Assembly: GCA_002269645.1 (NCBI GenBank)
Contig: NIVC01001037.1
Coordinates: 62,001 to 126,000 of the forward strand
Source of the DNA: Macrostomum lignano
Taxonomy: Eukaryota
Length of the DNA stretch: 64,000 nucleotides
Reading direction: 5' to 3'
Part shown: in pieces, positions 261-60,855 of the stretch
How positions within the stretch are numbered: position 1 is the stretch's first letter
Layout of the letters: each line of letters starts with the position of its first letter
Notes under the pieces: generated by a model
Seen by the model: only the letters and a program-made list of their open reading frames with translations
What the model was told of the DNA's origin: nothing
The model's database searches: none
Position numbers and translations under genes: made by a program

Positions 261-4403
<4,143 letters not shown>

Positions 4404-14400: not shown

Positions 14401-15595
14401 GGGTCAGCAGGTGAGATAAGATGAGTCACAGTCGCTAATCAGTGAGTCAGCAGGTGAGATAAGATGGGTCACAGTCACTGATCAGTGGGTCAGCAGGTGA
14501 GATAAGATGGGTCACAGTCACTGATCAGTGGGTCAGCAGGTGAGATAAGATGGGTCACAGTCACTGATCAGTGGGTCAGCAGGTGAGATAAGATGGGTCA
14601 CAGTCACTGATCAGTGGGTCAGCAGGTGAGATAAGATGGATCACAGTCACTGATCAGTGGGTCAGCAGGTGAGATAAGATGGGTCACAGTCGCTAATCAG
14701 TGAGTCAGCAGGTGAGATAAGATGGGTCACAGTCACTGATCTGTGAGTCAGCAGGTGAGATAAGATGGGTCACAGTCGCTAATCAGTGAGTCAGCAGGTG
14801 AGATGAGATGGGTCACAGTCGCTGATCAGCTGTGGGTCAGCAGGTGAGATAAGATGGGTCACAGTCGCTGATCAGCTGTTGGTCAGCAGGTCTGCCACAA
14901 TTTATGATCAAGTAGAGTCAGAATCAGGTCAGAGTGCTACAGGTGCTGGTACAAGAGATGATTATTATTTAATCGGAGCCGTCAATCAATCGCACTGCCC
15001 GCCTGTCCCAGGTGCGCCGGCGCGACAACCCGCACCTGTGGCCAATCGATCTGGACACGTACGAGCGCGACAAAGTTGATGCCGCTGTGCAGGAGAGCCT
15101 GGAGCAGCAGCTGCTGCAGCAACAGCGGCGGGAAGAGTCTCACGACGAGAATCAGATTGATGATGCCGAGGATCGCAACTATGATGAGGCTGGAGAGATT
15201 CTGGCCCCATCTGCGGCCGAGGTTAACAACAATGACGCGGGCGTTGGAGCCGAGCTGCCAGCTCTGAACATCGATGCTCCGGAGTTCGTGCCCGTGTGGG
15301 GCGGCGCTGCTCAAGGTTTGTTGGTGTCAAAATTTTATTTTCAACCTGTAACTGTCAGTTAAGCAGAGTTGGCAGTGGTTAGTACACTCCGAATGCAGTC
15401 TAGTTGAAGCAATTCATGAACCCTGATTGTTTTTTTATTTCGCTGGTCAATTTTAGTTGCTAGCCGGCCGGAGCCGCAGCAAGAGGAGTTGCCTGCAAAC
15501 GATGCAGCGCAGCATTTCTCGGCCAGTCTGCCTCAGGATATTGGCCGATGTGAGTGAAGATCTGTATCTACTGCTTAGTTAGTCAGTCAGTTAGC

Positions 15596-15629
<34 letters not shown>

Positions 15630-15749
15630 ATCAGTTAGTGAGCTAGTTAGTTAGTTAGCTAGTTGGTTAGTTAGTTGGTTAGTTAGTTAGTTGGTTAGTT
15701 AGTTAGTTGGTTAGTTGGTTAGTTAGTTAGTTGGTTAGTTAGTTAGTTG

Positions 15750-15802
<53 letters not shown>

Positions 15803-15931
15803 CTAGTGAGTTAGTTAGTTAGCTAGTTAGTTAGTTAGTTAGTTAGTCAGTTAGCTAGTTAGTTAGCTAGTGAGTTAGTTAGTTAGTTAGCTAATCAGTT
15901 AGTTAGCTAGTGAGTTAGTTAGTTAGTTAGC

Positions 15932-15971
<40 letters not shown>

Positions 15972-24588: not shown

Positions 24589-25205
24589 AGAATGTTGGCA
24601 TAGTCTGACCCCCTACTACACATATCGCCATATTTTTTAAAGATCGGGAAAAAACAGTCCCTAAAACTTCAAACACAGACTGAAGCATTTCCGCCACAAT
24701 TATCTGGCAAAGCCAAATGCTCATAGTGCCTATAAACAACTTTGTTGATGAGCATATATACCGCGCGCTACAGCTTTTGGCCAGCCTCTCTGACACGCAT
24801 CTTAGACTAGACTGTAATTCTAATGACCTGAACAAATTTATTGGCCCAATCTTGTTTCAGCCAATGGGCAGAGGGCGTCAGATGCGTAGGCAGTTGTAGG
24901 TCTGCTCTGTCTGCCAGCAATTGTGTGTGCTGGTGGCTCCTGCGCCCCCCCTCCCCTCCCCTCCAAGGGGGCAGAGGGCCGCCCGATGACGGAGGGGTGT
25001 TGTTTCGGCGGAGGCTGGGGTGGCCGCTGGTGGGGCTGGAAATTGTTTTGCAACTGTGTAGCCGCCGCATCCGAGGGCCAGCCGGCCGGGTGTGGAATAA
25101 AAGGTGCCCTAACCCTGCTTTTCCGCTGTGCAGCAGCAGCTCTCTTTGGCTGACAGCCCCAACCGCAAGTTCGCCCAGGAAAAAGCAGCAGCAGGTTCAG
25201 CGACA

Positions 25206-43139: not shown

Positions 43140-44785
43140 ATTAGAGGGCGTTTGTTGCAGAGATTTGAAGGCGATTCTTGAGGAGATTGGAGGGTGATTC
43201 TTGCAGAGATTGGAGGGTGATTCTTGAGGAGATTGGAGGGCGATTCTTGAGGAGATTGGAGGGTGATTCTTGCAGAGATTGGAGGGCGATTCTTGCAGAG
43301 ATTGGAGGGCGATTTTTGAGGAGATTGGAGGGTGATTCTTGAGGAGATTGGAGGGCGATTCTTGAGGAGATTGGAGGGTGATTCTTGCAGAGATTGGAGG
43401 GCGATTCTTGCAGAGATTGGAGGGCGATTTTTGAGGAGATTGGAGGGCTATTCCTGCAGAGATTGGAGGGCGATTCCTGCAGAGATTTGTAGGGCTATTC
43501 CTGCAGAGATTGGAGGGCGATTCCTGCAGAGGTTGGAGGGCGATTCCTGCAGAGATTGGAGGGCGATTCCTGCAGAGATTGGAGGGCGATTCCTGCAGAG
43601 ATTGGAGGGCGATTCCTGCAGAGATTTGTAGGGCTATTCCTGCAGAGATTGGAGGGCGATTCCTGCAGAGATTTGTAGGGCTATTCCTGCAGAGATTGGA
43701 GGGCGATTCTTGCAGAGATTTGTAGGGCTATTCCTGCAGAGATTGGAGGGCGATTCCTGCAGAGGTTGGAGGGCGATTCCTGCAGAGATTGGAGGGCGAT
43801 TCCTGCAGAGATTGGAGGGCGATTCCTGCAGAGATTGGAGGGCGATTCCTGCAGAGATTTGTAGGGCTATTCCTGCAGAGATTGGAGGGCGATTCCTGCA
43901 GAGATTTGTAGGGCTATTCCTGCAGAGATTGGAGGGCGATTCTTGCAGAGATTTGTAGGGCTATTCCTGCAGAGATTGGAGGGCGATTCCTGCAGAGGTT
44001 GGAGGGCGATTCCTGCAGAGGTTGGAGGGCGATTCCTGCAGAGATTGGAGGGCGATTCCTGCAGAGATTGGAGGGCGATTCCTGCAGAGATTTGTAGGGC
44101 CATTCCTGCAGAGATTGGAGGGCGATTCCTGCAGAGATTTGTAGGGCTATTCCTGCAGAGATTGGAGGGCGATTCTTGCAGAGATTTGTAGGGCTATTCC
44201 TGCAGAGATTGGAGGGCGATTCCTGCAGAGGTTGGAGGGCGATTCCTGCAGAGATTGGAGGGCGATTCCTGCAGAGATTGGAGGGCGATTCCTGCAGAGA
44301 TTTGTAGGGCTATTCCTGCAGAGATTGGAGGGCGATTCCTGCAGAGATTTGTAGGGCTATTCCTGCAGAGATTGGAGGGCGATTCTTGCAGAGATTTGTA
44401 GGGCTATTCCTGCAGAGATTGGAGGGCGATTCCTGCAGAGGTTGGAGGGCGATTCCTGCAGAGATTGGAGGGCGATTCCTGCAGAGATTGGAGGGCGATT
44501 CCTGCAGAGATTGGAGGGCGATTCCTGCAGAGATTTGTAGGGCTATTCCTGCAGAGATTGGAGGGCGATTCCTGCAGAGATTTGTAGGGCTATTCCTGCA
44601 GAGATTGGAGGGCGATTCTTGCAGAGATTTGTAGGGCTATTCCTGCAGAGATTGGAGGGCGATTCTTGCAGAGATTTGTAGGGCTATTCCTGCAGAGATT
44701 GGAGGGCGATTCCTGCAGAGATTTGAGGGCAATTCTTGCAGAGATTTGGAGGGCGATTCTTTTAGAGATTGGAGGGCTATTTTTG
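43140..44785. repeat. 23/24-bp satellite (GGAGGGCGATTCCTGCAGAGATT, TGTAGGGCTATTCCTGCAGAGATT) with a ~233-bp higher-order unit
   Basis: Near-identical 82-aa pseudo-ORFs recur at 43710, 43943 and 44386. Confidence 0.96.
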
Positions 44786-44972
44786 CGGAGATAAATTGCG
44801 CTGTTTCAAAGACAGGTGACTCTGAAGTCGTTAAACAGTAAAAACTACTCAATGCAAAAAGACAGCAAACTGTGGATTCAAATTTGTGACACCCCAGAAC
44901 ACACGAACTTGACTTGTACAAGCAGAAACTAATAAAAGTACAAAAATCGGTCTCAGAAGTCTCATTCTACAA

Positions 44973-47900
44973 TCATTTCCCGCCCGGGGCTCGAATCGGC
45001 AGTCCCTGAATGGCGTCCCTGTACGCCTGCGGCGGCCGCGTCTTTGGCCGGTCGCCCGGGTGCGCCTCGGTGAAGTGCGTGTCCAGAACTTCGCGCGACC
45101 AGTAGGAGCGCCGGCACAGGTGGCAGTGGTGCGGGAACACGCCCAGGTGGTACTGCACAATGTGATCCTTCAGGCTGTTCAAGCTGCTGGAGGAGCTGGT
45201 GCACACCGAGCAGTGGTAGGTCACCCCGCCGAAGTTGCCACGCTTGCGCACCACCCAGCACTTGGCCAGAGGCGCCGGGTCCACCGCCCGGTCCAGCGAG
45301 TCCGGCATCAGCAGCAGCTCCTTGCCGTTCACCATCACGCTGGCTGGCTGGGCGGCCGCCGTCTCGGCGCCTTCCTCTTCATCGTCCTGCTCCTCATCGT
45401 CTTCCTGGGCTTCGGTCTCAGCCTCCTCCTCTTCCTCATCGCCAGCCTCTTCCTCCGCTTCGCCGTCTTCGCCGTCTTCCTCAGCGCCGTCGTCCTCGAT
45501 AATCTGCATCTCGGCATCGTCAGCATAGTCTTCCTCATCAGCCTCCTCCTCGTTCCCTTCTTCATCGTCTCCAGCCTCCCCAGCCTCCTCATCATTGTCG
45601 CCGTTATCAGCTCCGTCCTCGTAATCTTCCTCTTCATCATCTTGTTCCTGGTCTTCTTCTTCCGACATCGATCGGGGCCGCTTCCTGCTGCCGGAAGAAG
45701 AATTGCCAGAGGCCGAGGCAGCTGCGGAGGCGGCGGCGGCGGCAGCGGCGGCTTCTCGACGAGTCTTGGCGGCCGCGATGGCGGCGGCGGAGCGCTGCAG
45801 AATCCGCTTGGCCTGACTGGACGGCTTGACGTCCACGCGGTTCATGGCGTAGCGATAGGCCGAGTACTGCAGCAGGTGGAACTCGCGCTGCGGGTGCTCC
45901 AGCAGGTGGTGCCGGAACACGTGGTTCCTGACCGCGTACAGCTTGCCACACACGCTGCACTTGTGCCCGGGAATGCGCAGGTGGTCGCGCACGATGTGGC
46001 CCCGGACTGGGCCAACATTGTGGGAGCCGAACTCGCACCAGCTGCAGGTGAACTGGCACCTGCCCGGCGGCAGCGGCTTCTCCGACTCGTCAGCCTGGAT
46101 GACGAAACAGGTTGTGGGGATCTGCGGCCGGTCGGACGAGCACTGCATCTCTGGCGGGACGCCCGCGCTGGACGATGTCGAATCCTCCGCGTCCTCGCCT
46201 GGCTCGTCGGCTGAGGCCACGGAGGTCACGAGTTCCTGGTCGGAGCCGGCGCCCGTGGTTTTGATTTTTATTCGAAGACCTTTATTGGGCGAGGCGGCGA
46301 CGCTGCCGGTGGCCGAGGCAGGCGACACCGAGGCTGCGGGGGTGCCGCTCTGGAACGGAGATTTAAGGTAGATTTAGGGTGGATTCTCGGGTAGATTTAG
46401 GGTGGATTCTCGGGTAGATTTAGGGTGGATTCTCGGGTAGATTTAGGGTGGATTCTCGGGTAGATTTAGGGTGGATTCTCAGGTAGATTGAGGGTCGATT
46501 CTCAGGTATATTCCCAGGTACTCGTAGATTTAGGGTAGATTTTCGGGTATACTCTCAGGTAGATTTAGGGTCGATTCTTGGGTAGATTTAGGGTTGATTC
46601 TCAGGTAGATTTAGGGTCGATTCTTGGGTAGATTTAGGGTTGATTCTCAGGTAGATTTAGGGTCGATTCTTGGGTAGATTTAGGGTTGATTCTCAGGTAG
46701 ATTTAGGGTCGATTCTCAGCTAGATTTAGGGTAGATTCTCAGATAGATTTAGGGTATATTCTCAGATAGATTTAGGGTAGATTCTCGAATAGATTTAGGG
46801 TAGATTCTCAGATAGATTTAGGGTAGATTCTCAGCTAGATTTAGGGTCGATTCTCTGAGATTTAGGGCAGATTCTTAGGTAGATTTAGGGTCGATTCCAA
46901 GGTAGATTTGAGGTTGATTTCCAGGTAAATTAAGGGTGGATTTGGGTAAGATTTTGGGTGTGATTTGGGTAGACAAGTTACTTTCATTGTAGGTTTAGGT
47001 AAGATGCAGATTTTGATGATTGAAATCAAAAATCAACTCACAGAGGCGGCTCTGGCGGGTCGGAGCGGCACCATGCTGGGAAATGCGGCATCATAAGAGG
47101 CGGTGGACGCAGCGGCAGCGGCGGAAACGGCAGCTGCAGACGAAACAGCCGACAAGGCCTCGGTGGCAGCGCCGCCCCTGCCGAGTTTTTCCTCGTTCGG
47201 TCCGACCGTGCCCTTCCACTTGAGTCTGGCCAGCTGGATGAGCAGCGGGTCGGGCAGCAGGCGGTTGTCGTCTCTGCTCAGGCGGCTGGCGTGCAGGCAG
47301 GCCGTCTTGAACCTGTCCGGCACCTTGGCGTGCACGCCCAGGATGTGCTTGCGAATGTCGCCCATGCCGTGCGGGCTGGAGGCGGAGCAGCCGGAGCAAC
47401 GGAACACCCGCTTGTTATCCGACACTGTGCGAGTCACGGCCACCTTGTAGGTGCTGTAGTACTCCATCTTCTCGCGCAGAATCTCCATGGTTTCCGAGTC
47501 GCAAGCTCCCTCAATGAGGACCTGAACACAGCGCCAAAGGCGGATGGGAAACCTTTGTTCAGATGGGTTAGTGGGTCCGATAGGGACTGGGGATAAGTCA
47601 GCGTTGGATCAGGGACTGTCGGTGGGTCAGAATGGGTCAGTTTTGGATCAGGGACTGTCGGTGGGTCAGGAGAGGATGGGTCAGTCTTAGATCAGGGACT
47701 GTCGGTGGGTCAGGATGGGTCAGTGTTGGATCAGAGACTTCGGTGGGTCAGGATGGGTCAGTGTTGGATCAGGGACTGTCGGTGGGTCAGGATATGTCAG
47801 TCTTGAATTAGGGGATGTCGGTGGGTCAGGATAGGTCAGTGTTGGATCAGGGACTGTCGGTGGGTCAGGACATGTCAGTCTTGGATTAGGGGATGTCGGT

Positions 47901-50900
47901 GGGTCAGGATAGGTCAGTGTTGGATCAGGGACTGTCGGTGGGTCAGGATAGGTCAGTGTTGAATCAGGGAATGTCGGTGGGTCAGGATGGTCAGTGTCGA
48001 AATTCGGCAGGAAATAATTCCCAAGACAAGTGAGCGATACGTCAGACTCTCACCTGCAGCGCGCTAAACGAATACGGCAGTTCGACCGCCCGCTCCAGCT
48101 CGCCTTCTTCTTCCAAAACCCGCAGGCTTGCCAGCCGCTGCTCCTGGGTGGCCACCTCATGGGGCTGGATTGGCGGCTCCGACCTGCCCAGGCCGCCGCC
48201 CAGCATAGTCGGCGTTGAAGTTGACAGGCCGCCAGCCGACGAGGCGCCGGCGGGCGACGCGGTCGGCGATATTGCGGCGGCGCGGTGCTCGGAGTCGGCA
48301 ATGAGGCCCAGGGCGGCTGTTGGAGCGAATTTGTGGATGCGTGAGGCTGGGACTAGGAGGCTGACCCAGCAACTGGGGATCTGGGAGGCTGGTCCAGCAA
48401 CTGGGGATCTGGGAGACTGACCCAGCAACTGGGGATCTGGGAGGCTGGTCCAGCAACTGAGGATCTGGGAGGCTGGCCCAGCAACGGGAGATCTGGGAGG
48501 CTTCCCCAGCAACTGGGGATCTGGGAGGCTGGCCCAGCAACTGGGGATCTAGGAGGCTGACCCAGCAACTGGGGATCTAGGAGGCTGGCCCAGCAGCTGA
48601 GGAAATGGGAGGCTGGCCCAGCAACTGAGGATCTGGGAGGCTGGCCCAGCAACTGGAGATCAGGGAGGCTGGCCCAGCAACTGGGGATCTGGGAGGCTGG
48701 CCCAGCAACTGAGGATCTGGGAGGCTGGCTCAGCAACTGGGGATCTGGGAGGCTGGCCCAGCAGCTGGGGATCTGGGAGGCTGGCCCAGCAGCTGGGGAT
48801 CTGGGAGGCTGGCCCAGCAACTGGGGATCTGGGAGGCTGACCCAGCAACTGGGGATCTGAGAGGCTGGCCCAGCAACTGGGGATCTGGGAGGCTGCCCCA
48901 GCAACTGGGGATCTGGGAGGCTGGCCCAGCAACTGGGGATCTGGGAGGCTGGCTCAGCAACTGAGGATCTGGGAGGCTGGCCCAGCAACTGGGGATCTGG
49001 GAGGCTGACCCAGCAACTGGGGATCTGGGAGGCTGACCCAGCAACTGGGGATCTGGGAGGCTGGCCCAGCAACTGAGGATCTGAGAGGCTGGCCCAGCAA
49101 CTGAGGATCTGGGAGGCTGGCCCAGCAACTGAGGATCTGGGAGGCTGGCCCAGCAACTGAGGATCTGGGAGGCTGGCCCAGCAACTGAGGATCTGGGAGG
49201 CTGGCCCAGCAACTGAGGATCTGGGAGGCTGGCCCAGCAACTAAGGATCTGGGAGGCTGGCCCAGCAACTGGGGATCTTTCAATTTACAAGTGTGCATTA
49301 CTAGGCTCCATAAAGCTACGAATAGGAAAAGGGCCGGTCACAAAAACACAGCGTGAGCAGCAGCGCACCGGATGAGCTGGACTTGAGCAGCTTGCCGGTC
49401 TCGCCAGGCCACACCGGGTGCGAGCTGTACAGCAGGGAGGAGAACTCCGGCTGCTGCTGCTTCTTCCCCGCATCGTCGCCGCGCTGCTGCGATTCGCCCG
49501 TCAGCATCGAGCAGGAGTCCTCGCCAGGGCCGCAGCCGCTCTCGTCCAGTCGAGAGTTCTGGTTGCTAAGCGCGCTGTCGTCAAGGGAACGAGGCGCGGA
49601 AGCAAAATTCGTGGAAGCCTTGGCCGGCCGCTCGTTGGCCAGCCGGAGCAGCATCTCGTCCGCGTACAGATGCCAGTTGTTCTCCCGCGAGATGCGGCTG
49701 GCCTGACAGCAGGTGGTCAGCATCTCGTGCGAGATTCTGGCGTGGACGCCCATCACGTGACGCCTGGCGTCGGCCAGGGTGCTGGGGCGGACGCTGTTGC
49801 CCGGCCGGCGCACCGTGTGGAAGACGCGGCCGCAGATGCACTTGTACGCCACGGTTTTTCCGCGGGCAATCTGCCTGACCAGCTGGTACTTGGAGTAGGC
49901 CCGCATCTTCGCCACCAGACTGTCCTGGTGCGGCCGGTCGCTGGCGTCCCGGAGCAGATGGCGGAGCACCGCCTCAGAGAAGGGCAGGTTGATCACCTGG
50001 TGGGGAGGCGACGGACAGACACTCCTAGAGTCCGTTCTGCTTATTGACATTCAGTCTGGCACTCTTAGATTCAGTCTGACACTCTCAGATTCAGTCTGGC
50101 ACTCTCAGATTCAGTCTGGCACTCTCAGATTCAGTCTGGCACTCTCCGATTCAGTCTGGCACTCTCAGATTCAGTCTAGCACTCTCAGATTCAGTCTGGC
50201 ACTCTTAGATTCAGTCTGGCACTCTCCGATTCAGTCTGGCACTCTCCGATTCAGTCTAGCACTCTCAGATTCAGTCTGGCACTCTTAAATTCAGTCTGGC
50301 ACTCTTAGATTCAATCTGGCACTCTCAGATCCAGTCTGGCACTCTTAGATTCAGTCTGGCACTCTTAAATTCAGTCTGGCACTCTCCTATTCAATATTTC
50401 AGTCTCCTATCTAATGTCATTTTTTCGTTTGATCTGGCACTGATACTCAATCTGTCACTATTCTATTCAATCTGTCACTCCGCACACCAGAAAATCTCGC
50501 GAGTTCGCACCTCCTCCTCGTCAACCCCGTCGGCCTCCTCAAAGTGGCTGGGGTTCTGGCCGAAGTGCAGCATGGCGCCTTTCCCAGCCGTATCGGTGAA
50601 GCCCGTCGATGAAGAAGCGGTGACAGCGGAACCCGCCGCAGTGACGCCGTCCACCGAGGACGGCGTTGACGGCGGCTTCAGCTGTTGAGACAAGCTGGAC
50701 GGAGGCTCCAGCACCGCGGCAGCGTCCGGGTCAAGCATCATCACATCCTCGGCGTCCTCAGACGAACCGGCGGCCCTGGGGTCGGACTGGCGAACCCGAA
50801 CGAATTCCCTAGCGAGCCGGATGAGCTTGTCGTCGGAGAGCAGGGTGTACTCAGCCGGGTCCAGGCGGGACGCCTGCAGGCAGTAGCGGAAGTGCTTGGT

Positions 50901-51144
50901 TGAAATGCCGCAGTGGGCGCCCAGGATGTGCTTGCGAACGTCGGCCAGAGCGTGCGGCGAAGCGTAATTGCAGGAGCCGCACAGGTACTTCTTGCCGTTG
51001 CGGGCATCCACTATCACGTACAGAGTGGAGTAGGTGGCCATCTTGGCGATGAGGTACTCCTGCAGTGCGGAGGGGAAGCTGGACTTGGGACTGCGGTGTC
51101 TTAAGATGTGCCTGCCTGCCTGTCTGTCTGTCTGTCTGTCTTAG

Positions 51145-51221
<77 letters not shown>

Positions 51222-51265
51222 GACCGTCTGTCCGTCTCTCTTTAATGTCTTTCTGTCTGTCTTAG

Positions 51266-51310
<45 letters not shown>

Positions 51311-51352
51311 TTAATGTCTTTCTGTCTGTCTGTCTGTCTTAGTGTCTGTCCA

Positions 51353-51387
<35 letters not shown>

Positions 51388-54300
51388 GCCTGTCTGTCCC
51401 TCTGTCTTAGTGTCTTGGTGCCGTACTGTCTGTCTGTTGGTGTGTCTTTAAATGCAAACCATCAAACATCCAGAAGCAGCCAATCAATCACCTGCGACTC
51501 CCTGCTGAAGTGCTGGGTCAGCTGCCTGAGCACGGCGGTACTGTACGGCAGCGGCACCCGGTGGCGAAAGGCGTCGATGCGCACCGGCCGTGGCAGGCTG
51601 CGCTCGTTCTCGGGCTCGGATTTGCGAACCTGCGGTAAGCGGCAGATTATAATGAGCGAGTGTACTACTGCCGCTTGGCGGATGTAGTAGTATGCGAGGG
51701 ACATGAAAAATGCAGTATACAGTGAAACAGTGAATTTTTGGCGGGGTTGATCAGAGATTATTGGGTAGGGTTGTTGAGTAGACTATTTGATAGGGTTGAG
51801 TAGACTGTTGGGTAGGATTGGGTAGATTATTGGCTGGGGTTGGGTAGACTACTGGATAGGGTTGGGTAGACTGTTGGGTAGGGTTGAGTAGACTGTTGGG
51901 TAGGGTTGAGTAGACTGTTGGGTAGGGTTGGGTAGACTATTAGGTGGGGTTGGGTAGACAATTGGGTGGGGTTGGGTAGACTGTTGGGTAGGTTTGGGTA
52001 GACTATTGGGTGGGGTTGGGTAGACAATTGGGTGGGGTTGGGTAGACTATTGGGTGGGGTTGGGTAGACTATTGGGTGGGGTTGGGTAGACTATTGGGTG
52101 GGGTTGGGTAGACTATTGGGTGGGGTTGGGTAGACTATTGGGTGGGGTTGGGTAGACTATTGGGTGGGGTTGGGTAGACGATCAGGTGGGGTTGGGTAGA
52201 CTATTGGATGGGGTTGGGTAGACGATTGGGTGGGGTTGGGTAGACTATTGGGTGGGGTTGGGTAGACTGTTGGGTAGGTTTGGGTAGACTATTGGGTGGG
52301 GTTGGGTAGACTATTGGGTGGGGTTGGGTAGACGATCAGGTAGGTTTGGGTAGACTATTGGGTGGGGTTGGGTAGACGATTGGGTGGGGTTGGGTAGACT
52401 ATTGGGTGGGGTTGGGTAGACTGTTGGGTAGGTTTGGGTAGACTATTGGGTGGGGTTGGGTAGACTATTGGGTGGGGTTGGGTAGACGATTGGGTGGGGT
52501 TAGGTAGACCCACCAGGGTGATGGCGCCGGCTTTGTTGCTACCCGGAACCGGCTGAGTGAACTTCAGGCAATCTCGCACGGTGTCTCTCGGTATGCCCAG
52601 ATGAACGCTAAGCAGATGCCGTTTAAAATCGCCCAGGCCGTAGGGAAAGGCCCGCTTGCATTCCGGGCACTCCGGGATGCGGCGCTGGTTCTCGCGGCCC
52701 AGGATTTTCACTCGATAGCCGCAGAACAGCTTCATCTTGGCGATGAGGGTCTCCGTGGCGGCCGTAGCCGGCCTGGCGGCCCTGTAGGCCTCCTCGTGGA
52801 ACGGGAAACTCACGTACTCGGTGGTTTCGCTGGACACGTCTAGACGGGGCACTTTTGTACCGTCGGCTGTTGCTGGACCGGCTGCGGCGGCATTGGCGGC
52901 GGCTGGTGACGCAGAGATGAGGGAGGCGAGCGCTGAGCTGGGCTGCTCATCCAGTGGCCGCTTCCGAACCAGCTGCAGGAGCTGCTGCTGCTGCTGAGGC
53001 TGCGGCTGTGGCGGCGGTGGCGGCGGCGGCGGCAGCTCCTCAACGAGCGTCTTGGCCAGCATTACGCGAGAAGTGCGAATGTCTTCTTGGAGCAGAGTGG
53101 CCTGAAATAAAAGTTGAAATTTGAAACTTTCCACTGAGGATCAGGGGAGGATTCCACTGAGGATCAGGGGTGGATTTCACTGAGGATCAGGGGTGGATTT
53201 CACTGAGGATCAGGGGAGGATTCCACTGAGAATCTCGGGAGCGGATTCCACTGAAGATCAGGGGAGGATTCCACTGATGATCAGGGGCGGATTCCACTGA
53301 TGATCAGGGGCGGATTCCACTGAGGATCAGGGGAGGATTCCACTGATGATCAGGGGCGGATTCCACTGATGATCAGGGGCGGATTCCACTGAAGATCAGG
53401 GGAGGATTCCACTGAGGATCAGAGGCGGATTCCACTGAGAATCTCGGGAGCGGATTCCATTGAAGATCAGGGGCGGATTCCACTGATGATCAGGGGCGGA
53501 TTCCCAGTTATAACCCGAGTTGGCAGTGCAGCAGAGGACAATAAAATGAGTCGAAGACTCCAGCCCGAAGAAAGGGTTGCGCCACTGAATTTCCCCGCAA
53601 GCCTCGCTGCCCTGTGAAGAATTCAACGAGTCGTTCGCGGGCACGATGACGTCACAATGAATGACGTCATTCTAATCGAAATGAAGCCCCCAGAAAGCCC
53701 AAGAGGACCGGACAATGATAGAATGAACTCTGGCACAATTGCCCAACAACAAGCCTGCGCAACACTCGACCCTGTTCCACACAACCCCTGCCTCTCTTCC
53801 TGTCGAGTCGAGCCAAATGCAGACGAGACCCGGTCGATGCGGACCGGACAGTCAGTGCAACTCAGTACCACTCACCCACACTGACCGGCCAGTCATTCAG
53901 CGCGGTATCTCCCTCCCTCTCTCCCTCTATAGGGGAGCATTCTGTTCATCCAGACCCGGCCATCTGCGCGGTCCTTCGACAAGCAAGCAGCGGCCGCCCA
54001 AGGCCCCGGCAGTGTTCCACGCCAGCCATGGAGCTTCATCCGTTTTGCCTGCCTTTCCCGCCAACCCCTAGCGCGGCCGGGTTCCTCCCCCACCCACACC
54101 ACAGGCCTTCACTGCAGTCAAGGCCCGGCCGCTGTCGCGCTGCAATCATCCGCTGTGCTTCCTCTCCTCTCTCTCTCTCTTTCTCTCACTGCAGACAGAC
54201 TCCTGGAGAGCCTGGAGCTTCAACCGCCGGCCTGCGTCCGTCGGGACGGGGTGAGGATGGAGGAAAGAGAGACGACCGGGGGGCCCCAAGGACGAATGCA

Positions 54301-56560
54301 GCCCCGACAGTGAAGGGGCAGGCAGGCGGGCAGGCAGAGACGGGCAGGGCCGCTGCGTGTGGAAATGGAAGAGAGGAGAGGAGAGATGGAGGCACTGAAG
54401 GCAGGCAGGCCGGGGGACCCCGCCCGATTCAGGGCTGCCTCGGCGTTGGAGAGGCAGGCAAGCAGGCAGGCAGGCGGGGCTTTGAGGTGAAAAAGGAGGC
54501 TCTGCCCGATACAGCCAGCCAGAGCCCACAGCCGAAGCCACAGCAGGCGCGGTCGTGACGCTGACTGGGGGGGGGGGGCCGCGGCAAGGCCAAATGAGGC
54601 AGGCCTCTGGACCTTGGCGGCTGGGCGGGGGCAGAGAAGCAGAAGAGAGACCGAGGAGGAGAAAGAGGAGCCGGGGGGCGGGTAGGAGGCGGACAGGCAG
54701 GAGCTGAGCTGACTCACTCGATCTCGGCATTCAAACAGACAGCGCAGCGCAGGCAGGAGATGCAGCGAGAATGCGAATAGACAGGCGGGCGCACAGGAAG
54801 CAGCAGCAGGTGCAAAGACTGTTGATGCCGCAGATGCTTTTCCGCCAGCCCTCAGCTTCTATCGCTGAATCTTGCCTTTCCCATTCTGTCTGGATCGTCT
54901 CTGATTGCGCCCCGGCGACGCAGCTGCGAAATCTCGCCAAGAGAAGAAGAAAATGAATTAAGAATTTTCCAGAAATTTCTGTCATCGTGGCCGGTGCAAA
55001 AGAAACCGCGCCCCAAAAGAAATCGAAGAGGCGAGACCCGCGAGCGAGGGCCACAGGCCCGCCCGCGGCACACAGGAAGGGGAGCGGGGAGGTGGGGAAA
55101 CGCACGCGCAGGGCACAGGCTAGTGGAAAGGCCTGAACAGAGGAAATGGAAGTCAAGCCCCGTCCAGCTTAGAAGGGTGTCGCTAAAGGAGGTCATAAAT
55201 GCACAACCGCCCGAGTTGAACTGAGTTGAATGCTCTGGCTTCCTTCAATGCGTCTGAGTTTCCACTCTCACGGTGGGCGCCAAATGTTGAGCTGGAGCAC
55301 AACTCACGCAATGTGTACATAGAGAGAGCAGCCACACACAGTTATAGCATTGCTGAAATCATTCAGCGCATTTCTACTTTCCACCTTCGCTACAAGCGTA
55401 TGCCGCGCAGACAGTCACACACACGCACGCACAGACTGTCAAGCGGCTGACAATCCGGCCCAGCAGACACTGACGGGGTAAGAAAGGCAGGCAGGCGGCC
55501 AGTCCAATGCGCGAGTGCGTACACAACGCGACAGCCACGCAGCGCCCGGCCAGCAGTGACACAGCCCAGCCTGCTAGAATTTAGGTGGGGTGGCGGCAGC
55601 GGCTGGAGGACCCGCGCGAGGCCCGCCTAAGCTTCTAGTCTCTCTCCACTGCCTGTCGCCCTCTCTCACTCGGGGGTCCGCAACCTCCCCGATTCTCTCT
55701 CGCTGAGCGGCGCAGTTGCAGGCTGCAGCCAGCGGCTGGGGAGAGGAGGTCGCTGCAATCTCTCGATGCGGTCCCGGCCTCTGGGAAACAGTGTGAGAGA
55801 GGCAGAGAAGCTCTCTCTGTCAGGCAGGCCGCACGCAGCAGCGCGGGTGTTCTCTCTCTCTCTCTCTCTCAGCCTGCCTCTCCTCTCCGTGGCTCGGCCC
55901 CCGGGGCAGTCCAGACCGCGGGGCTTCCGCTCCCGCGTTCCACCTCAACACAGCGGCAGGTTGCAAAATCTGGGCCAAGGCCGCTGATTGCCTCTCCGAC
56001 CTCCGTCACCTCCGTCACCTCCGTCACCCCCCTCCGCCGTCTCCTCCGCCGCGGCGCTCTCTCGACCCGACCGTCGTTGGTCAGTCAGCAAGCAATGGTT
56101 CCGCTGTAACCTTCCGCCTACTTCAAGTTAAGCCTTGCCTAGGTAAAGCCTGAAGACACTGTTATAATCCGCATTAGGGGTCGGCTCGACTGACTTATGC
56201 CAGGTTGCCAGGTTACTAGCGGGCGGCCAGACTGCACAGATTCTATAGCTAGAGCTAGAAGGCCAAGGCAATGGGTGACTTGGACTGCGACTGACTGCTG
56301 AGCTTCATTCTCTCTCAAGCGATCGAGCGGGCAGGAGGCCCACCGCCGCCACCGCCGCTGCCGCCGTGGCACGCGCGCACACAGAGAGAATTCTCTCTGT
56401 CTCGCTCTCTCTTGAATTCCTTCCTTCTCTCTTCTCTCTGCCTGCCCGCCTGCCTCTTCGTCGGTCGCGTCAGCCAGCCAGCCAGCCAAGGCGGGCGGGC
56501 ACGGCAGCTTTGAGAGTCCCCGAGGCCAAGAAGAGCCTCGAAGCGTAGCAATATAGAAAT

Positions 56561-56594
<34 letters not shown>

Positions 56595-59500
56595 GCGCAG
56601 CACACGCGAGCGGGCAGTCGCCGCCCCACCCCAACCGCCTCCCTTCAGCCAGCTCGATCTTCTTTCTTTCGAGGCCTTGCCTGGCCCGCCTGCCCGACAG
56701 ACGAAGCCTCCCCGAGGCAGCCAAGGCAGCCAGCAGTCGGGGCAAAGGCACACAAGCGCAGATAAACTCGGCGGCCCACCTCAATCAAGCTGCACACACA
56801 CACACACACACTGCGCGACATGCCTCTTCAACAACAGAGTGCTGCACTGGTCGAGCAGTCAGTTAACCTGCCTGCCGCCCGCTTTAGCCAGCAGCAGCAG
56901 CAGGTCTAAAATTAAATGACCACTTAGTTACTAGTTGGTGAATTGATATGATCGAATATTGCCTGATTTTCATGCTCTATATATAGGTTAATATGCAGGT
57001 GTGTTTGAGCACTGCTTTGAGACCACTGCTGATGACAGGGCAGGGCCTCCGCTAAACTCGAGAGTTCCAGTGCCCGATGAAGGCAGATAGGTGGCCAATA
57101 ATGACGATATTAAATTTGGAGATTAATATGATGTACTGGCTGTGCATAATAAGAATAATTCCTTTACATACCGAAAGCGAATTGCCCTCTCATTGGGACT
57201 CGTCACCAACAGTCGTGAGAATCGCCCTTAATAGCCTTAAGAATCGCCTCCCACCTCCAGGACAGCCTTTAGAATCGGCCCACTCAGGACAGCCTTGAGA
57301 AGCGCCCCACTCAGGACAGCCTTGAGAAGCGCCCCACTCAGGACAGCCTTGAGAAGCGCCCCACTCAGGACAGCCTTGAGAAGCGCCCCACTCAGGACAG
57401 CCTTGAGAAGCGCCCCACTCAGGACAGCCTTGAGAAGCGCCCCACTTCAGGACAGCCTTGAGAAGCGCCCCACTCAGGACAGCCTTGAGAAGCGCCCCAC
57501 TCAGGACAGCCTTGAGAATCGCCCCCCTCCAGTACAGCCTTGAGAATCGCCCCCAGTACAGCTTTAAGAATCGCCCCCCCCCCAGTAAAGCTTGAGAATC
57601 GCTCTATTCCCCTCAGGACAGCCTTGAGAATCGCCCCACTCAGGACAGCCTTAAGAATCGCCCTCAACAGCCTTGAATCACGCCATGACTGCCAGACACT
57701 GAGCTAATTAGCATACCGTAAGCAAATGAAAGCTCATCTCACCTCGGGACTGTCAGGATGCGCAGACGCAATGTGCTCCAGAATCAATGCAGCATCCGTG
57801 GCCGCGGCGCCGCACTCTGAGCAGTGGCACAGTGTATAAGCAACAACGCTGGCTCCAGCCTCCCCAGCATCATCAGATTGCCTAGCGAAGCCACTGCCAC
57901 GACAGTCGGAGCAGAGATGCCGCAGGAATTTGCCCCAATCCACGGTGGCGAACTGGCAGGCCGGGCAGCGCAGGCCGAACACGGGCGGTCCGGCGGGTTT
58001 CTCCGGATCGGCGGCATCGGATTTGACAGTCAGACTGGCTGACGGCGGGTCGGCGAGAGGCGGCAGGCTCAGATAAGACACTGGCCGGGCAGCGCACGCC
58101 AGGTAGTCAATGCTGGCTATGGCCGTGGCCGGCTGGCTCGGGTGCCGCTTGGCCAGATGGCGCTGCACTGCCAGCTTGCTGGCGCTCTTCACCAGACAGC
58201 CGGGCACCTCGCAATGGTACAGCGGCCGGACGCTCTCCTCCAGGTGGGCTGGGCGAAGTAATCAGGCATGTACTTTTAGATGGAATCGGGGCTATCGGTA
58301 TAGAGAATATGATTGATTGTGCTCGACTCTTAGGCTTAAAGATTAGGGGTGATTCTCAGTGCTTGAGACTAGGGGTGATTCTCAGTGCTTGAGATTCTCA
58401 GGGCGATTCTCAGTGCTTGAGACTAGGGGTGATTCTCAGTGCTTGAGACTAGGGGTGATTCTCAGTGCTTGAGACTAGGGGCGATTCTCAGTGCTTGAGA
58501 CTAGGGGTGATTCTCAGAGTGCTTGAGACTAGGGGTGATTCTCAGTGCTTGAGATTCTCAGGGCGATTCTCAGTGCTTGAGACTAGGGGTGATTCTCAGT
58601 GCTTGAGACTAGGGGTGATTCTCAGTGCTTGAGACTAGGGGCGATTCTCAGTGCTTGAGACTAGCGGTGATTCTCAGAGTGCTTGAGACTAGGGGTGATT
58701 CTCAGTGCTTGAGACTAGGGGAGATTCTCGGTGCTTGAGACTAGGGGCGATTCTCAGTGCTTGAGACTAGGGGTGATTTTCAGTGCTTGAGACTAGGGGT
58801 GATTCTCAGTGCTTGAGACTAGGGGTGATTCTCAGTGCTTGAGACTAGGGGTGATTCTCAGTGCTTGAGACTAGGGGTGATTCTCAGTGCTTGAGACTAG
58901 GGGAGATTCTCAGTGCTTGAGATTGGGAACGATTCTTAATGCTTGAGATTCTCAGGGTGATTCTCAGTGCTTGAGATTAGAGGCGATATCAAAGGTAGAG
59001 AATAGGGGCGATACTCAAAGGTAGAGAATAGGGGCGATTCTCAAAGGTAGAGAATAGGGGCGATACTCAAAGGTAGAGAATAGGGGCGATTCTCAAAGGT
59101 AGAGAATAGGGGCGATTCTCAAAGGTAGAGATTAGGGGCGATTATCAAAGGTAGAGAATAGGGGCGATATCAAAGGTAGATAATAGGGGCGATACTCAAA
59201 GGTAGAGAATAGGGGCGATACTCAAAGGTAGAGAATAGGGGCGATTCTCAAAGGTAGAGAATAGGGGCGATTCTCAAAGGTAGATAATAGGGACGATTCT
59301 CAAAGGTAGAGAATAGGGGCGATTCTCAAAGGTAGAGAATAGGGGCGATACTCAAAGGTAGAGAATAGGGGCGATTCTCAAAGGTAGAGAATAGGGGCGA
59401 TTCTCAAAGGTAGAGATTAGGGGCGATATCAAAGGTAGATAATAGGGGCGATATTCAAAGGTAGAGAATAGGGGCGATACTCAAAGGTAGAGAATAGGGG

Positions 59501-60855
59501 CGATACTCAAAGGTAGAGAATAGGGGCGATTCTCAAAGGTAGAGAATAGGGGCGATATCAAAGGTAGATAATAGGGGCGATACTCAAAGGTAGAGAATAG
59601 GGGCGATTCTCAAAGGTAGAGAATAGGGGCGATATCAAAGGTAGATAATAGGGGCGATACTCAAAGGTAGAGAATAGGGGCGATACTCAAAGGTAGAGAA
59701 TAGGGGCGATTCTCAAAGGTAGAGAATAGGGGCGATACTCAAAGGTAGAGAATAGGGGCGATTCTCAAAGGTAGAGAATAGGGGCGATTCTCAAAGGTAG
59801 AGATTAGGGGCGATATCAAAGGTAGATAATAGGGGCGATATTCAAAGGTAGAGAATAGGGGCGATACTCAAAGGTAGAGAATAGGGGCGATACTCAAAGG
59901 TAGAGAATAGGGGCGATTCTCAAAGGTAGAGAATAGGGGCGATATCAAAGGTAGATAATAGGGGCGATACTCAAAGGTAGAGAATAGGGGCGATTCTCAA
60001 AGGTAGAGAATAGGGGCGATACTCAAAGGTAGAGAATAGGGACGATTCTCAAAGGTAGAGAATAGGGGCGATTCTCAAAGGTAGAGAATAGGGGCGATTC
60101 TCAAAGGTAGATAATAGGGACGATACTCAAAGGTAGATAATAGGGACGATTCTCAAAGGTAGATAATAGGGACGATTCTCAAAGGTAGATAATAGGGACG
60201 ATTCTCAAAGGTAGATAATAGGGGCGATTCTCAAAGGTAGATAATAGGGACGATACTCAAAGGTAGATAATAGGGACGATTCTCAAAGGTAGATAATAGG
60301 GACGATACTCAAAGGTAGATAATAGGGACGATTCTCAAAGGTAGATAATAGGGGCGAACCAGTTGATTTCCAGAGCATCAGAGGCCAAGCCCAGTGCAGG
60401 CCAGTGCTGGCAAGACGAGGCTCACCTGCAAGTTGCACGGCGCTGCCGAACACCTGGCCGCAGCAGCCGCAGGCGCAGTCCTCCATCCGGCCGCTGTGCA
60501 GCCCGTGGCAATGATCGAGAAAGGCGGTCTTGTCCTCCAGATAGGCTGAGCAGTGAGGACACGGGTACAGGTCCTGGGCGGTGGCTGCGGAGAAGTGACG
60601 CAGCTGGTGCTCGCCAATGTCAGCAGCGGGAACCTGGGTGAGGCAGTAGGGACACACGGACTCGACAGCGTTGTGCTCTGCGGCTGCGTGCTTGCCTAGC
60701 TGGCTGGGGTCCCAGGTTGAGTAAGCCAGGCAGAAGCCGCAGACACAGCAGGCGCTGGCAGACTCGAGTCGGTGCGCCAGCTGCTCATATTTGGCGTGCT
60801 GCGAGTCCTTGTCGAGCAGGGCGGCCCGCTGCTTGCGGAGCTTTGACACTGTCAG
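44973..60855 (-). CDS. Large multi-C2H2 zinc-finger protein (at least 1652 aa, about 15 fingers, 5' exon not found). Exons 60426-60855, 57743-58248, 52514-53101, 51492-51629, 50511-51059, 49369-49996, 48054-48316, 47042-47521, 44973-46349
   Basis: Nine exons joined by GT-AG introns give one open frame (phases 1,0,0,0,0,1,0,0). Many CxxC..HxxxxH motifs, an acidic D/E tract and an RKRPR NLS-like motif in the last exon. The first exon found has an acceptor (ccatcatccag|CTG) and no start ATG. Confidence 0.85.
46362..46965. repeat. 23-bp minisatellite (GTAGATTTAGGGTSGATTCTCRG), last ZnF intron
   Basis: Tandem array containing TTAGGG. Confidence 0.94.
47575..48000. repeat. 39-bp minisatellite (GGATCAGGGACTGTCGGTGGGTCAGGATAGGTCAGTGTT), ZnF intron
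   Basis: Tandem array. Confidence 0.93.
48345..49278. repeat. 28-bp minisatellite (CCAGCAACTGRGGATCTGGGAGGCTGGC), about 33 copies, ZnF intron
   Basis: Tandem array. Confidence 0.96.
50045..50395. repeat. 20-bp minisatellite (TTCAGTCTGGCACTCTCAGA), ZnF intron
   Basis: Tandem array. Confidence 0.95.
51110..51440. repeat. (GTCT)n microsatellite, ZnF intron
   Basis: Interrupted tetramer run. Confidence 0.95.
51760..52508. repeat. 22-bp G-rich minisatellite (GGGTAGACTATTGGGTGGGGTT), ZnF intron
   Basis: Tandem array with three G-runs per unit. Confidence 0.95.
53135..53505. repeat. 23-bp minisatellite (CCACTGAKGATCAGGGGCGGATT), ZnF intron
   Basis: Tandem array. Confidence 0.94.
57225..57675. 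repeat. 27-bp minisatellite (CCACTCAGGACAGCCTTGAGAAKCGCC), ZnF intron
   Basis: Tandem array. Confidence 0.94.
58335..60356. repeat. Two abutting homologous 26-bp arrays: CTCAGTGCTTGAGACTAGGGGTGATT (to ~58980) and CTCAAAGGTAGAGAATAGGGGCGATT (to 60356)
   Basis: Same period and same frame, diverged in the middle of the unit. Confidence 0.97.

What the first reader, a model, noticed from the sequence alone, without database searches (positions are those of the whole stretch)
47225..52825. Four copies of an unrecognised ~100-120-aa extended zinc-finger module in the ZnF gene
After splicing, four segments align: A (~52825-52565), B (51580-50810, intron-split), C (49996-49640) and D (48085-47225, intron-split). 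Shared pattern: [LF]P[YF]..L..L..(n)..L.[AE]KM..[YF]..Y.V..(n)..C-x1-2-C..(n)..[GA]D.[RK][KR]H[ILV][LM].[VA]H..[IV]..(n)..C, with the extra Cys exactly 11 residues after the second His in all four copies (HLLSVHLGIPRDTVRDC, HILGAHCGISTKHFRYC, HVMGVHARISHEMLTTC, HILGVHAKVPDRFKTAC). B-D then continue with ASR[LI]..L..D..L..LA. Conserved flanks much longer than an ordinary C2H2 finger suggest a larger folded domain with a zinc knuckle inside. Intron positions differ between copies, suggesting old duplications. I cannot assign it to a named family. This is the strongest candidate for an undescribed system in the window.
Basis: partly seen in the sequence, partly recalled or inferred. Interest (0 to 1): 0.8.

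Follow-up and report, generated by a model that had tools for sequence, protein, structure and literature searches.

The report
Flatworm-only extended zinc-finger domain, four copies
A large flatworm zinc-finger gene carries four copies of a roughly 120-residue domain built around a zinc finger; the domain matches no described family or solved structure, is found only in flatworms (including human parasites), and its function is unknown.

Summary
After GT-AG splicing of a minus-strand gene (about 60855 to 44973), four modules of about 115-135 aa sit at the stated coordinates.

- **Similarity:** pairwise BLASTP E-values range from 3e-6 to 5e-23 over 73-122 residues. For B, C and D the flanks alone, without the finger core, are still significant. 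A is the divergent copy and lacks the last helix.
- **Fold:** AlphaFold2 predicts a compact domain (module D pLDDT 92.5, pTM 0.84). It has the order β-α-α-β-β(Cx2C)-α(Hx4H)-α-α. A and B predicted together are two well-folded domains joined by a disordered linker.
- **No known relatives:** no Pfam model passes threshold, there is no PDB sequence match, and Foldseek finds nothing in PDB (best E 0.4-0.8, TM below 0.3).
- **Distribution:** a profile search of 1.84 billion cluster representatives gave 42 hits. Every hit that carries a source name is a flatworm (Macrostomum, trematodes, cestodes, monogeneans).
- **Age:** modules cluster by position across species, so the four-fold duplication predates the split of these classes.
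- **Correction:** the "extra Cys at +11" is universal only in modules B and C. It is Ala in most D orthologues and often Leu in A, so it is not a general zinc ligand.

Function is inferred only. The modules are net basic on acidic linkers and their recognition-helix residues are nearly identical. I read this as a multivalent nucleic-acid or chromatin scaffold. Verdict: a new variant of the C2H2 kind.

The parts
52565..52819 (-). Module A, the structured part (EYVSFPFHEE...RDTVRDCL). The Cys/His core CPECKRAFPYGLGDFKRHLLSVH lies at 52601-52669. This is the most divergent copy and has no fifth helix.
   Evidence: HMM envelope. Coordinates. AF2 tandem model residues 6-90 have pLDDT of about 90 with the order E-H-H-E-E-H-H.
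50787..51584 (-). Module B, split by a phase-0 intron (exon parts 51584-51492 and 51059-50787). The core CGSCNYASPHALADVRKHILGAH lies at 50913-50981.
   Evidence: AF2 tandem residues 123-244 have pLDDT of about 92-96. The stretch from ...ALADVRKHI through HCGISTK.FR.CLQASRLD is largely invariant in the A-B regions of 13 species.
49604..49996 (-). Module C, in one exon with the intron immediately 5' of VINLPF. The core CICGRVFHTVRRPGNSVRPSTLADARRHVMGVH lies at 49742-49840. It has C-x1-C and a 12-residue insertion.
47207..48104 (-). Module D, split by a phase-0 intron after ALQ (exon parts 48104-48054 and 47521-47207). The core CSGCSASSPHGMGDIRKHILGVH lies at 47330-47398.
   Evidence: AF2 gives pLDDT 92.5 and pTM 0.84.
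57743..60855 (-). Two 5' exons of the same gene (60855-60426 and 58248-57743). They encode about seven isolated C2H2-like fingers. The first coding exon with the ATG was not found.
   Evidence: tblastn of the paralogue P0005 and of orthologues. Sequence and splice sites.
52514..53101 (-). Exon carrying a proline/glutamine-rich low-complexity stretch followed by module A.
44973..46349 (-). Last exon. It holds two pairs of ordinary C2H2-like fingers (46082-45855 and 45266-45060), a 103-residue tract that is 62% Asp/Glu (45671-45363), a KRPR motif and the stop codon.

Best explanation
The four segments are paralogous copies of an undescribed zinc-binding protein domain of about 115-135 residues, restricted to flatworms.

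**Predicted anatomy.** A C2H2-type finger (Cx2C, 13 residues, Hx4H, presumably one zinc) sits in the middle of the domain. An N-terminal strand (..LP[YF]S), two helices (the second carrying KM..YS) and a strand ([YF]xV) extend the finger's hairpin into a small sheet. Two further helices follow the zinc helix, carrying the C..ASR[LI] and L..D..L..LA motifs.

**Where it sits.** The window is from Macrostomum lignano or a very close relative. The copies lie as independently folded beads on disordered, acidic or low-complexity linkers in a protein of more than 1650 residues. That protein also has about seven isolated fingers at the N-terminus, two finger pairs at the C-terminus and a long acidic tract.

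**Likely function (inferred, not shown).** The protein is probably a nuclear scaffold whose four net-basic modules give multivalent binding to nucleic acid or chromatin. They are unlikely to read DNA triplets as classical tandem fingers do. The residues at the classical base-contacting helix positions are nearly the same in all four modules and in all species: small residues at -1 and +2, an invariant Asp at +3, and Lys/Arg at +5 and +6. What differs between the modules is their flanks, and each module's flank is strongly conserved in its own way. This suggests four specialised, non-redundant binding units.
For: **Repeat and gene structure**
- One open frame across nine GT-AG exons.
- Pairwise BLASTP E-values of 3e-6 to 5e-23.
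- Flanks alone are significant for B, C and D.

**Fold**
- AF2 on module D gives pLDDT 92.5 and pTM 0.84, with elements E2-9, H14-20, H27-40, E44-50, E56-60, H71-82, H87-96 and H109-123.
- In the A-B tandem both modules reach pLDDT of about 90 or more in the same order of elements. The linker (residues 97-117) is below 50 and pTM is 0.53, which indicates independent beads.

**No described relative**
- Pfam hits are all below threshold.
- PDB sequence profile searches give a best E of 0.15-0.46.
- Foldseek against PDB gives best E 0.84 and 0.39 with TM below 0.3. The only sensible local hit is 35-37 residues of the Kaiso finger at about 2.8 Å.

**Distribution**
- 42 hits at E<=1e-3 among 1.84 billion representatives.
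- All named hits are Platyhelminthes.

**Age and constraint**
- Four modules in the same order in most full-length orthologues.
- Modules cluster by position across species.
- C60, C63, D73, H77 and H82 are invariant in 65 modules, and there are long class-specific invariant stretches.

**Charge**
- Mean module net charge is +3.8 (position 1), +10.1 (position 2), +4.9 (position 3) and +8.9 (position 4).
- In the window protein the two long inter-module linkers have net charge -9 and -7, and the C-terminal remainder -49.
Against: - The fold is a prediction. Model coordinates could not be inspected, so the zinc-site geometry is unverified and zinc binding is untested.
- Module C's C-x1-C knuckle and 12-residue insertion are unusual for a zinc site.
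- No AlphaFold DB or HHpred search was possible, so remote homologues outside flatworms, or an existing unannotated structural cluster, cannot be excluded.
- The functional reading rests only on charge, conservation pattern and architecture. A positive net charge is weak evidence, and isolated Hx4H fingers often mediate protein-protein contacts instead.
- Nuclear localisation is inferred from a single KRPR motif and the finger content.
- The splice junctions lack RNA-seq confirmation.
- The taxonomy of several hits (Logan and ENA contigs, including the divergent P0029 and P0034) is unknown.
Confidence: 0.6

Rival explanations
1. The modules are protein-protein interaction domains, for example recruiting a repeated or oligomeric partner or mediating self-association. 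On this reading any DNA or RNA binding is left to the plain fingers at the two ends of the protein.
For: - The fingers are isolated, have Hx4H spacing and lack TGEKP-type linkers.
- The would-be base-contacting positions are identical in all modules.
- Each module class has its own long invariant surface motifs, for example HCGISTKHFR.CLQASRLD in B. That pattern fits conserved partner interfaces.
- Ordinary finger pairs are available elsewhere in the protein.
Against: - The modules are consistently net basic, with means of +4 to +10, while the linkers are acidic. That favours polyanion binding.
- No partner or interaction motif has been identified, and nothing was tested.
Confidence: 0.25
2. 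The modules are ordinary, or BED-like and transposase-derived, C2H2 fingers. The apparent long domain would then be just conserved linker sequence, or a known extended finger type missed by the searches, so nothing new is present.
For: - The ligand pattern Cx2C...Hx4H and the hydrophobic and aromatic residues before the knuckle resemble BED and other atypical fingers. This resemblance is from memory.
- There are weak sub-threshold hits to zf-C2H2_4 and to the ZNF451 and ZNF462 finger models.
- There is a local Foldseek match to the Kaiso finger.
- One orthologue isoform, P0054, carries CENP-B_N and HTH_Tnp_Tc5 domains of the kind found in pogo-type transposases (the pogo link is from memory).
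Against: - zf-BED does not appear at E<=1 for any of the 28 modules or the window exons.
- No transposase domain is present.
- The flanks are predicted as helices and strands at pLDDT of 90 or more, not as linker.
- The flanks alone are significantly similar between B, C and D.
- No PDB structure, BED fingers included, matched by Foldseek at E<=0.001.
Confidence: 0.1
3. The feature is an artefact. On this reading it is a mis-spliced or pseudogenised locus in a repeat-rich region, and the similarity comes from recent local duplication.
For: Every intron is filled with minisatellites. Several public M. lignano gene models of this gene or its paralogues (P0001, P0009) are visibly frame-shifted.
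Against: - There is one uninterrupted reading frame across nine canonical GT-AG exons.
- Identity between the copies is only 25-41%.
- Orthologues in distant flatworm classes have the same four modules in the same order.
- Orthologues conserve many columns without change.
Confidence: 0.02

Closest known systems
Classical C2H2 (Krüppel/TFIIIA-type) zinc finger (Pfam PF00096, PF13894)
   Same: It has two Cys and two His in the order Cx2C...Hx4H. The predicted hairpin plus helix carries them, with a hydrophobic residue at helix +4. There are weak sub-threshold Pfam hits and a local structural match of 35-37 residues at about 2.8 Å to the Kaiso finger.
   Different: - The folded unit is about 115-135 residues rather than about 25-30, with three extra helices or more and extra strands.
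- The Cys-His spacer is 13 residues (25 in module C) rather than 12.
- Module C has C-x1-C.
- There are no TGEKP linkers and no tandem array. The modules are separated by 6-150 residues of disordered linker.
- Helix positions -1, +2, +3 and +6 are the same in all copies instead of varying.
- All Pfam scores are below the gathering thresholds.
BED-type zinc finger (Pfam PF02892; hAT transposases, ZBED, BEAF, DREF)
   Same: From memory, BED also has Cx2C...Hx3-5H, usually as 'HLxxxH' (Hx4H). It has aromatic or hydrophobic residues in a strand before the knuckle, is larger than a classical finger (about 50-60 residues) and occurs as single units.
   Different: - There is no zf-BED hit at E<=1 for any module.
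- There is no Foldseek hit to any solved structure.
- The module is twice as long, with conserved LP[YF]S and KM..YS elements and C-terminal helices that BED lacks.
- No transposase is associated with it.
Atypical isolated fingers of large vertebrate proteins (ZNF451, ZNF462, ZNF512; Pfam PF23107, PF23225, PF23075; PDB 2ctd)
   Same: These are also Hx4H fingers, scattered singly or in pairs through long, largely disordered proteins. They give the recurrent best weak hits here, at E 0.006-0.14.
   Different: All the hits are non-significant and cover only the 25-30 residue core. None covers the flanks. There is no evidence of orthology.
ZFP-1 / ZFP-1-1 family of flatworm-specific zinc-finger regulators (Wendt et al. 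2018, PMC5927768)
   Same: This is precedent for zinc-finger proteins that are restricted to flatworms, conserved from macrostomids to flukes and tapeworms, and functionally important (epidermal and tegument lineage specification).
   Different: According to the paper, ZFP-1 proteins have three canonical tandem C2H2 fingers with DNA-reading motifs (QRSNLQR, RKDHLxR) and little conservation elsewhere. The present family has four extended modules plus isolated fingers and shares no such motifs. It is a different family.
Ros/MucR prokaryotic C2H2 domain
   Same: From memory, this is another case in which a Cys2His2 site is embedded in a larger globular domain with its own hydrophobic core, rather than forming a mini-domain.
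   Different: It is bacterial, about 58 residues, with a different topology and ligand spacing. Foldseek gave no match. It is an analogy only.

Membership tests
Classical C2H2 zinc finger (PF00096/PF13894; PROSITE PS00028) | Ligand pattern C-x2-4-C ... H-x3-5-H | tested here: met
   A, B and D have C-x2-C and H-x4-H. C has H-x4-H but C-x1-C, which is outside the pattern. C60, C63, H77 and H82 are invariant in 65 modules.
Classical C2H2 zinc finger (PF00096/PF13894; PROSITE PS00028) | 12-residue spacer between the second Cys and the first His | tested here: not met
   The spacer is 13 residues in A, B and D and 25 in C.
Classical C2H2 zinc finger (PF00096/PF13894; PROSITE PS00028) | Score above Pfam's gathering threshold for a C2H2 model | tested here: not met
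   The best scores are 14-17 bits against cut-offs of 25-40 bits. The best E-value among the 28 modules is 0.0011.
Classical C2H2 zinc finger (PF00096/PF13894; PROSITE PS00028) | ββα fold around one zinc ion | tested here: inconclusive
   The AF2 secondary structure places the Cys pair at the turn after strand E56-60 and the His pair in helix H71-82. There is a local Foldseek match to the Kaiso finger, but its E-value of 3.6 is not significant. Coordinates and zinc could not be examined.
Classical C2H2 zinc finger (PF00096/PF13894; PROSITE PS00028) | Autonomous unit of about 25-30 residues, typically in tandem arrays with short conserved linkers | tested here: not met
   The ordered unit is about 85 residues (A) to about 122 residues (B, D). 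The modules are separated by disordered linkers.
BED zinc finger (PF02892) | Match to the zf-BED profile | tested here: not met
   zf-BED is absent from the hits at E<=1 for the window exons and for all 28 modules.
BED zinc finger (PF02892) | Structural similarity to solved BED domains | tested here: not met
   Foldseek found no PDB match at E<=0.001 for either model.
Unnamed flatworm four-module zinc-finger protein family (for example S. haematobium MS3_00006590, C. sinensis CSKR_107249, O. felineus CRM22_010490, H. microstoma CDS27594.1) | Four extended modules in the fixed order A-B-C-D, each orthologous by position | tested here: met
   The window protein has four full-length profile matches in order. 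Each clusters with the same-position module of the other species.
Unnamed flatworm four-module zinc-finger protein family (for example S. haematobium MS3_00006590, C. sinensis CSKR_107249, O. felineus CRM22_010490, H. microstoma CDS27594.1) | Flanking N-terminal isolated fingers and a C-terminal finger pair | tested here: met
   tblastn of P0005, P0018 and P0040 places the N-terminal finger exon at about 58250-57740, and P0005 also places the one at 60855-60577. P0005 and P0002 place the C-terminal fingers in the last exon. The frame is continuous.
ZFP-1 family (flatworm-specific, PMC5927768) | Three tandem canonical C2H2 fingers with QRSNLQR / RKDHLxR helices | tested here: not met
   No such motifs or tandem triplet appear in the spliced protein.

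The most novel reading that the evidence does not exclude
The module is a new protein fold that arose in the flatworm lineage by building a full globular domain around a C2H2 finger. Its four-module protein would be an essential chromatin or RNA regulator found only in flatworms, and therefore a parasite-selective target. It is conserved nearly residue-for-residue in Schistosoma, Clonorchis/Opisthorchis, Paragonimus and tapeworms, and no counterpart was detected outside flatworms, so none in the vertebrate hosts.
Probability: 0.3. Interest if true: 0.7.

Novelty: new variant of a known kind. Interest (0 to 1): 0.55.

Why it matters
Domains restricted to one lineage, deeply conserved and entirely uncharacterised are rare entry points into phylum-specific biology.

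This one is present in free-living Macrostomum, a laboratory model for regeneration and stem cells. It is also present in many medically and veterinarily important fluke genera and in tapeworms. Stretches of 30 or more residues are unchanged between classes, which implies strong and ancient constraint.

Structurally, it would show how a 30-residue zinc finger can be extended into a domain of about 120 residues. Practically, a conserved protein found only in flatworms is a candidate for RNAi phenotyping in Macrostomum, planarians or schistosomes and possibly for selective targeting. It would also justify a new Pfam/InterPro entry, which would annotate proteins currently labelled only as "C2H2-type domain-containing".

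Tried and rejected
- **Pfam:** scans of the window exons, of 28 modules and of full-length orthologues up to 1834 aa gave only sub-threshold generic finger hits. P0019, at 1780 aa, gave no family at all at E<=0.1.
- **PDB sequence profile searches:** two profiles gave only noise, namely GDF2/BMP9, MP42 and ZNF512 at E of 0.15 or worse.
- **Foldseek:** two models against PDB and one against BFVD gave nothing significant.
- Trimming module C to its exon solved this.
- **Search with the divergent relative P0029:** this was meant to learn its taxon. It returned only one further unnamed Logan protein, and its contig carries no other gene, so its taxon remains unknown.
- **Third word-indexed search, with a broadened 26-module profile:** only 570 candidates were scored. 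It gave two further flatworm fragments, from Trichobilharzia and Protopolystoma, and no extension beyond flatworms.
- **Literature:** searches for flatworm zinc-finger work and for six orthologue locus tags found no paper on this family. The ZFP-1 family was considered and rejected as different.
- **Extra Cys as a fifth ligand or alternative zinc ligand:** rejected on conservation.
- **A and B as a rigid pair:** rejected on pTM 0.53 and a linker with pLDDT below 50.

Full report
**1. What is in the sequence**

The region is part of a multi-exon gene on the minus strand. Reading the reverse strand and joining canonical GT-AG sites gives these exons: 53101-52514, 51629-51492, 51059-50511, 49996-49369, 48316-48054, 47521-47042 and 46349-44973, which carries the stop.

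Two further 5' exons, 60855-60426 and 58248-57743, were located with tblastn of relatives and by inspecting the splice sites. All nine exons together read as one frame with a single terminal stop. The exon with the start codon was not found.

Nearly every intron is filled by its own minisatellite. This explains the many spurious repeat "ORFs".

**2. The four copies**

A profile built from them finds four full-length matches in the spliced protein and only weak, core-only matches to the ordinary fingers of the last exon.

- Pairwise BLASTP between the window's modules gives E = 2.7e-6 (A-C) to 4.7e-23 (B-D) over 73-122 residues at 25-41% identity.
- With the Cys...His core cut out, the N-flanks and C-flanks of B, C and D still match each other at E 1e-7 to 4e-4. 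A's flanks are only marginal on their own.
- Window coordinates of the modules and their ligand cores are and agree with the finding.
- The quoted H...C strings, with Cys 11 residues after the second His, are exact.
- Intron positions differ between copies as stated.
- Module C is unusual. It has C-x1-C and a 12-residue insertion before the helix.

**3. Organism and relatives**

The best database hit is a Macrostomum lignano protein, 91% identical over the aligned part. The differences look like gene-model errors. Other hits are hypothetical or "C2H2-type domain-containing" proteins, all unannotated and with no precomputed Pfam domain. They come from:

- trematodes: Fasciolopsis, Echinostoma, Opisthorchis, Heterobilharzia;
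- a cestode: Dibothriocephalus.

A profile of 28 modules (A3) was scored against all 1.84 billion 50%-identity representatives. It found 42 proteins at E<=1e-3, 33 at E<=1e-10 and 21 at E<=1e-30. The tail of the list is generic multi-finger proteins that match only the core.

Every hit that carries a source name is a flatworm:

- trematodes: Schistosoma (several species), Trichobilharzia, Clonorchis, Opisthorchis, Paragonimus, Dicrocoelium, Calicophoron;
- cestodes: Hymenolepis, Mesocestoides, Spirometra;
- monogeneans: Cichlidogyrus, Protopolystoma.

A few divergent members come from unnamed assemblies: P0029 and P0059 from Logan ERR14224706, plus P0034 and P0042. Their taxon could not be determined.

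Most full-length orthologues have four modules in the same order. In an average-linkage clustering of 71 modules, all first modules group together (in two groups, matching two paralogue lineages present in trematodes). The same holds for all second, all third and all fourth modules. The four-fold duplication is therefore older than the split between Macrostomorpha and Neodermata.

**4. Is it a larger folded domain?**

AlphaFold2 on module D with the 28-module alignment gives mean pLDDT 92.5 and pTM 0.84. It has 108 of 127 residues at 90 or above, and the elements are E2-9, H14-20, H27-40, E44-50, E56-60, H71-82, H87-96 and H109-123. The Cys pair sits at the turn after E56-60 and the His pair lies in H71-82. 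A finger-like hairpin and helix is thus embedded in a β-α-α-β-β-α-α-α domain.

A second prediction covered the window's A-linker-B stretch (247 aa, 13 orthologues). Both modules come out at pLDDT of about 90 or more with the same order of elements. A has no fifth helix. Residues 97-117 are below pLDDT 50 and pTM is 0.53. The modules therefore look like independent beads on a flexible linker.

Two caveats apply: these are predictions, and I could not inspect coordinates or zinc geometry.

**5. Comparison with what is known**

- No Pfam model reaches its threshold for the window exons, for any of the 28 modules or for full-length orthologues.
- The recurrent weak hits are zf-C2H2_4 and the ZNF451 and ZNF462 finger models, and they cover only the core. 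zf-BED does not appear at all.
- Profile searches of PDB sequences give nothing better than E 0.15.
- Foldseek of both models against PDB gives best E-values of 0.84 and 0.39 with TM below 0.3. The only biologically sensible alignments are 35-37 residues of the Kaiso finger at about 2.8 Å. BFVD gives nothing.
- Literature searches found no paper on this family.
- The known flatworm-specific ZFP-1 family is different. It has three canonical tandem fingers with DNA-reading motifs.

**6. Conservation pattern and what it suggests**

Across 65 modules, C60, C63, D73, H77 and H82 (module D numbering) are invariant and M37 is 94% conserved. L10, P11, S13, K36, Y40, R75, G80, S97 and R98 are conserved at 74% or more.

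The extra Cys at position 93 is 100% conserved in modules B and C. It is Ala in 88% of D modules and most often Leu in A. It is therefore not a general ligand, and the Macrostomum pattern of "all four copies" is partly lineage-specific.

Each positional class has long stretches of its own invariant residues. Module B's ...ALADVRKHI...HCGISTK.FR.CLQASRLD region, for example, is largely invariant across the A-B regions of 13 species.

With the first His at helix position +7, the classical base-contacting positions are small residues at -1 and +2, an invariant Asp at +3 and Lys/Arg at +6. These are essentially the same in all four classes. That is not what triplet-reading tandem fingers look like.

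The modules are net basic. Mean net charge by position is +3.8, +10.1, +4.9 and +8.9. In the window protein, the two long inter-module linkers are acidic (net -9 and -7) and the C-terminal remainder is net -49, with a 103-residue tract that is 62% Asp/Glu.

**7. Most likely mechanism**

*Shown or strongly supported:* a flatworm-restricted family of extended zinc-finger domains, present as four ancient, specialised, independently folding copies in a large multi-finger protein.

*Inferred:*
- Each module binds one zinc through Cys2His2.
- The protein is nuclear. It has many fingers, a KRPR motif and an acidic tract.
- The basic modules provide multivalent, non-triplet binding to nucleic acid or chromatin.

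The main rival is that the modules are protein-interaction domains. I cannot separate these two readings with sequence tools. I put about 0.8 on the structural and evolutionary statement and about 0.35 on the nucleic-acid/chromatin reading. The overall confidence given reflects both.

**8. Novelty and score**

The core belongs to a known kind (C2H2-type). The domain of about 120 residues around it has no described family and no solved structural counterpart, and it is confined to one phylum. I rate it a new variant of a known kind.

It is not a spectacular surprise, since lineage-specific domains exist. It is nevertheless a clean, well-supported and previously unannotated domain family. It is extremely conserved in a phylum that includes major human parasites and regeneration models, and it is directly testable. 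Interest: 0.55.

The main open risk to novelty is that AlphaFold DB and HHpred comparisons, which were not available here, might reveal distant relatives.

Noticed in passing
window 44000-60357 (introns and 3' flank of the zinc-finger gene): Almost every intron is dominated by its own minisatellite. Examples are a 23-bp unit x34 at 44000-44792, 28 bp x33 at 48349-49278, 22 bp x34 at 51755-52509, 26 bp x77 at 58340-60357 and (CTGT)n at 51112-51407. Several units share a GGGCGATTC / GAATCGCCC core, which suggests a related repeat family that colonises introns.
   Followed up: partly
window 752-2531 (-), 13896-18843 (+), 25128-25676 (+): The neighbouring genes are subtilase S8 (proprotein-convertase-like) exons, a LARP1 orthologue (La domain and LARP1_HEAT region) and an RRM protein. 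Their introns are also repeat-filled.
   Followed up: partly
window 45363-45671 (-): The last exon contains a 103-residue tract that is 62% Asp/Glu. It lies between the two C-terminal finger pairs and is preceded by an alanine run and a KRPR motif.
   Followed up: no
orthologue P0054 (Opisthorchis felineus TGZ55107.1), residues 6-130: One annotated isoform of the fluke orthologue starts with CENP-B_N and HTH_Tnp_Tc5 DNA-binding domains. This is either a real fusion with a transposase-derived (pogo-type, from memory) DNA-binding region or a gene-model artefact.
   Followed up: no
L001 (Logan ERR14224706 contig, 485-3214); P0029, P0059, P0034: These are highly divergent relatives with three recognisable modules plus plain fingers, from unnamed assemblies.
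   Followed up: partly
trematode and monogenean proteins P0011, P0013, P0014, P0021-23, P0039, P0040: Flukes carry two paralogous four-module genes. One has a first module of the 'VSFPFDE' type, like the window. The other has a 'YVQLYFNEAAF' type with long inter-module linkers and a conserved RSRRSMILKSKRPCPT C-terminus. A monogenean (Cichlidogyrus, P0040) has the second type. The M. lignano paralogue P0005 appears to lack modules A and B.
   Followed up: partly
window 53500-57700 (4.6-kb intron between exons 58248-57743 and 53101-52514): This is an unusually long, GC-rich (57-62%) intron that is mostly not minisatellite. It contains a dinucleotide run, seen as 'CVCVCV' in the ORF translations near 56.3-56.6 kb. 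It was not examined for a nested gene or a regulatory element.
   Followed up: no
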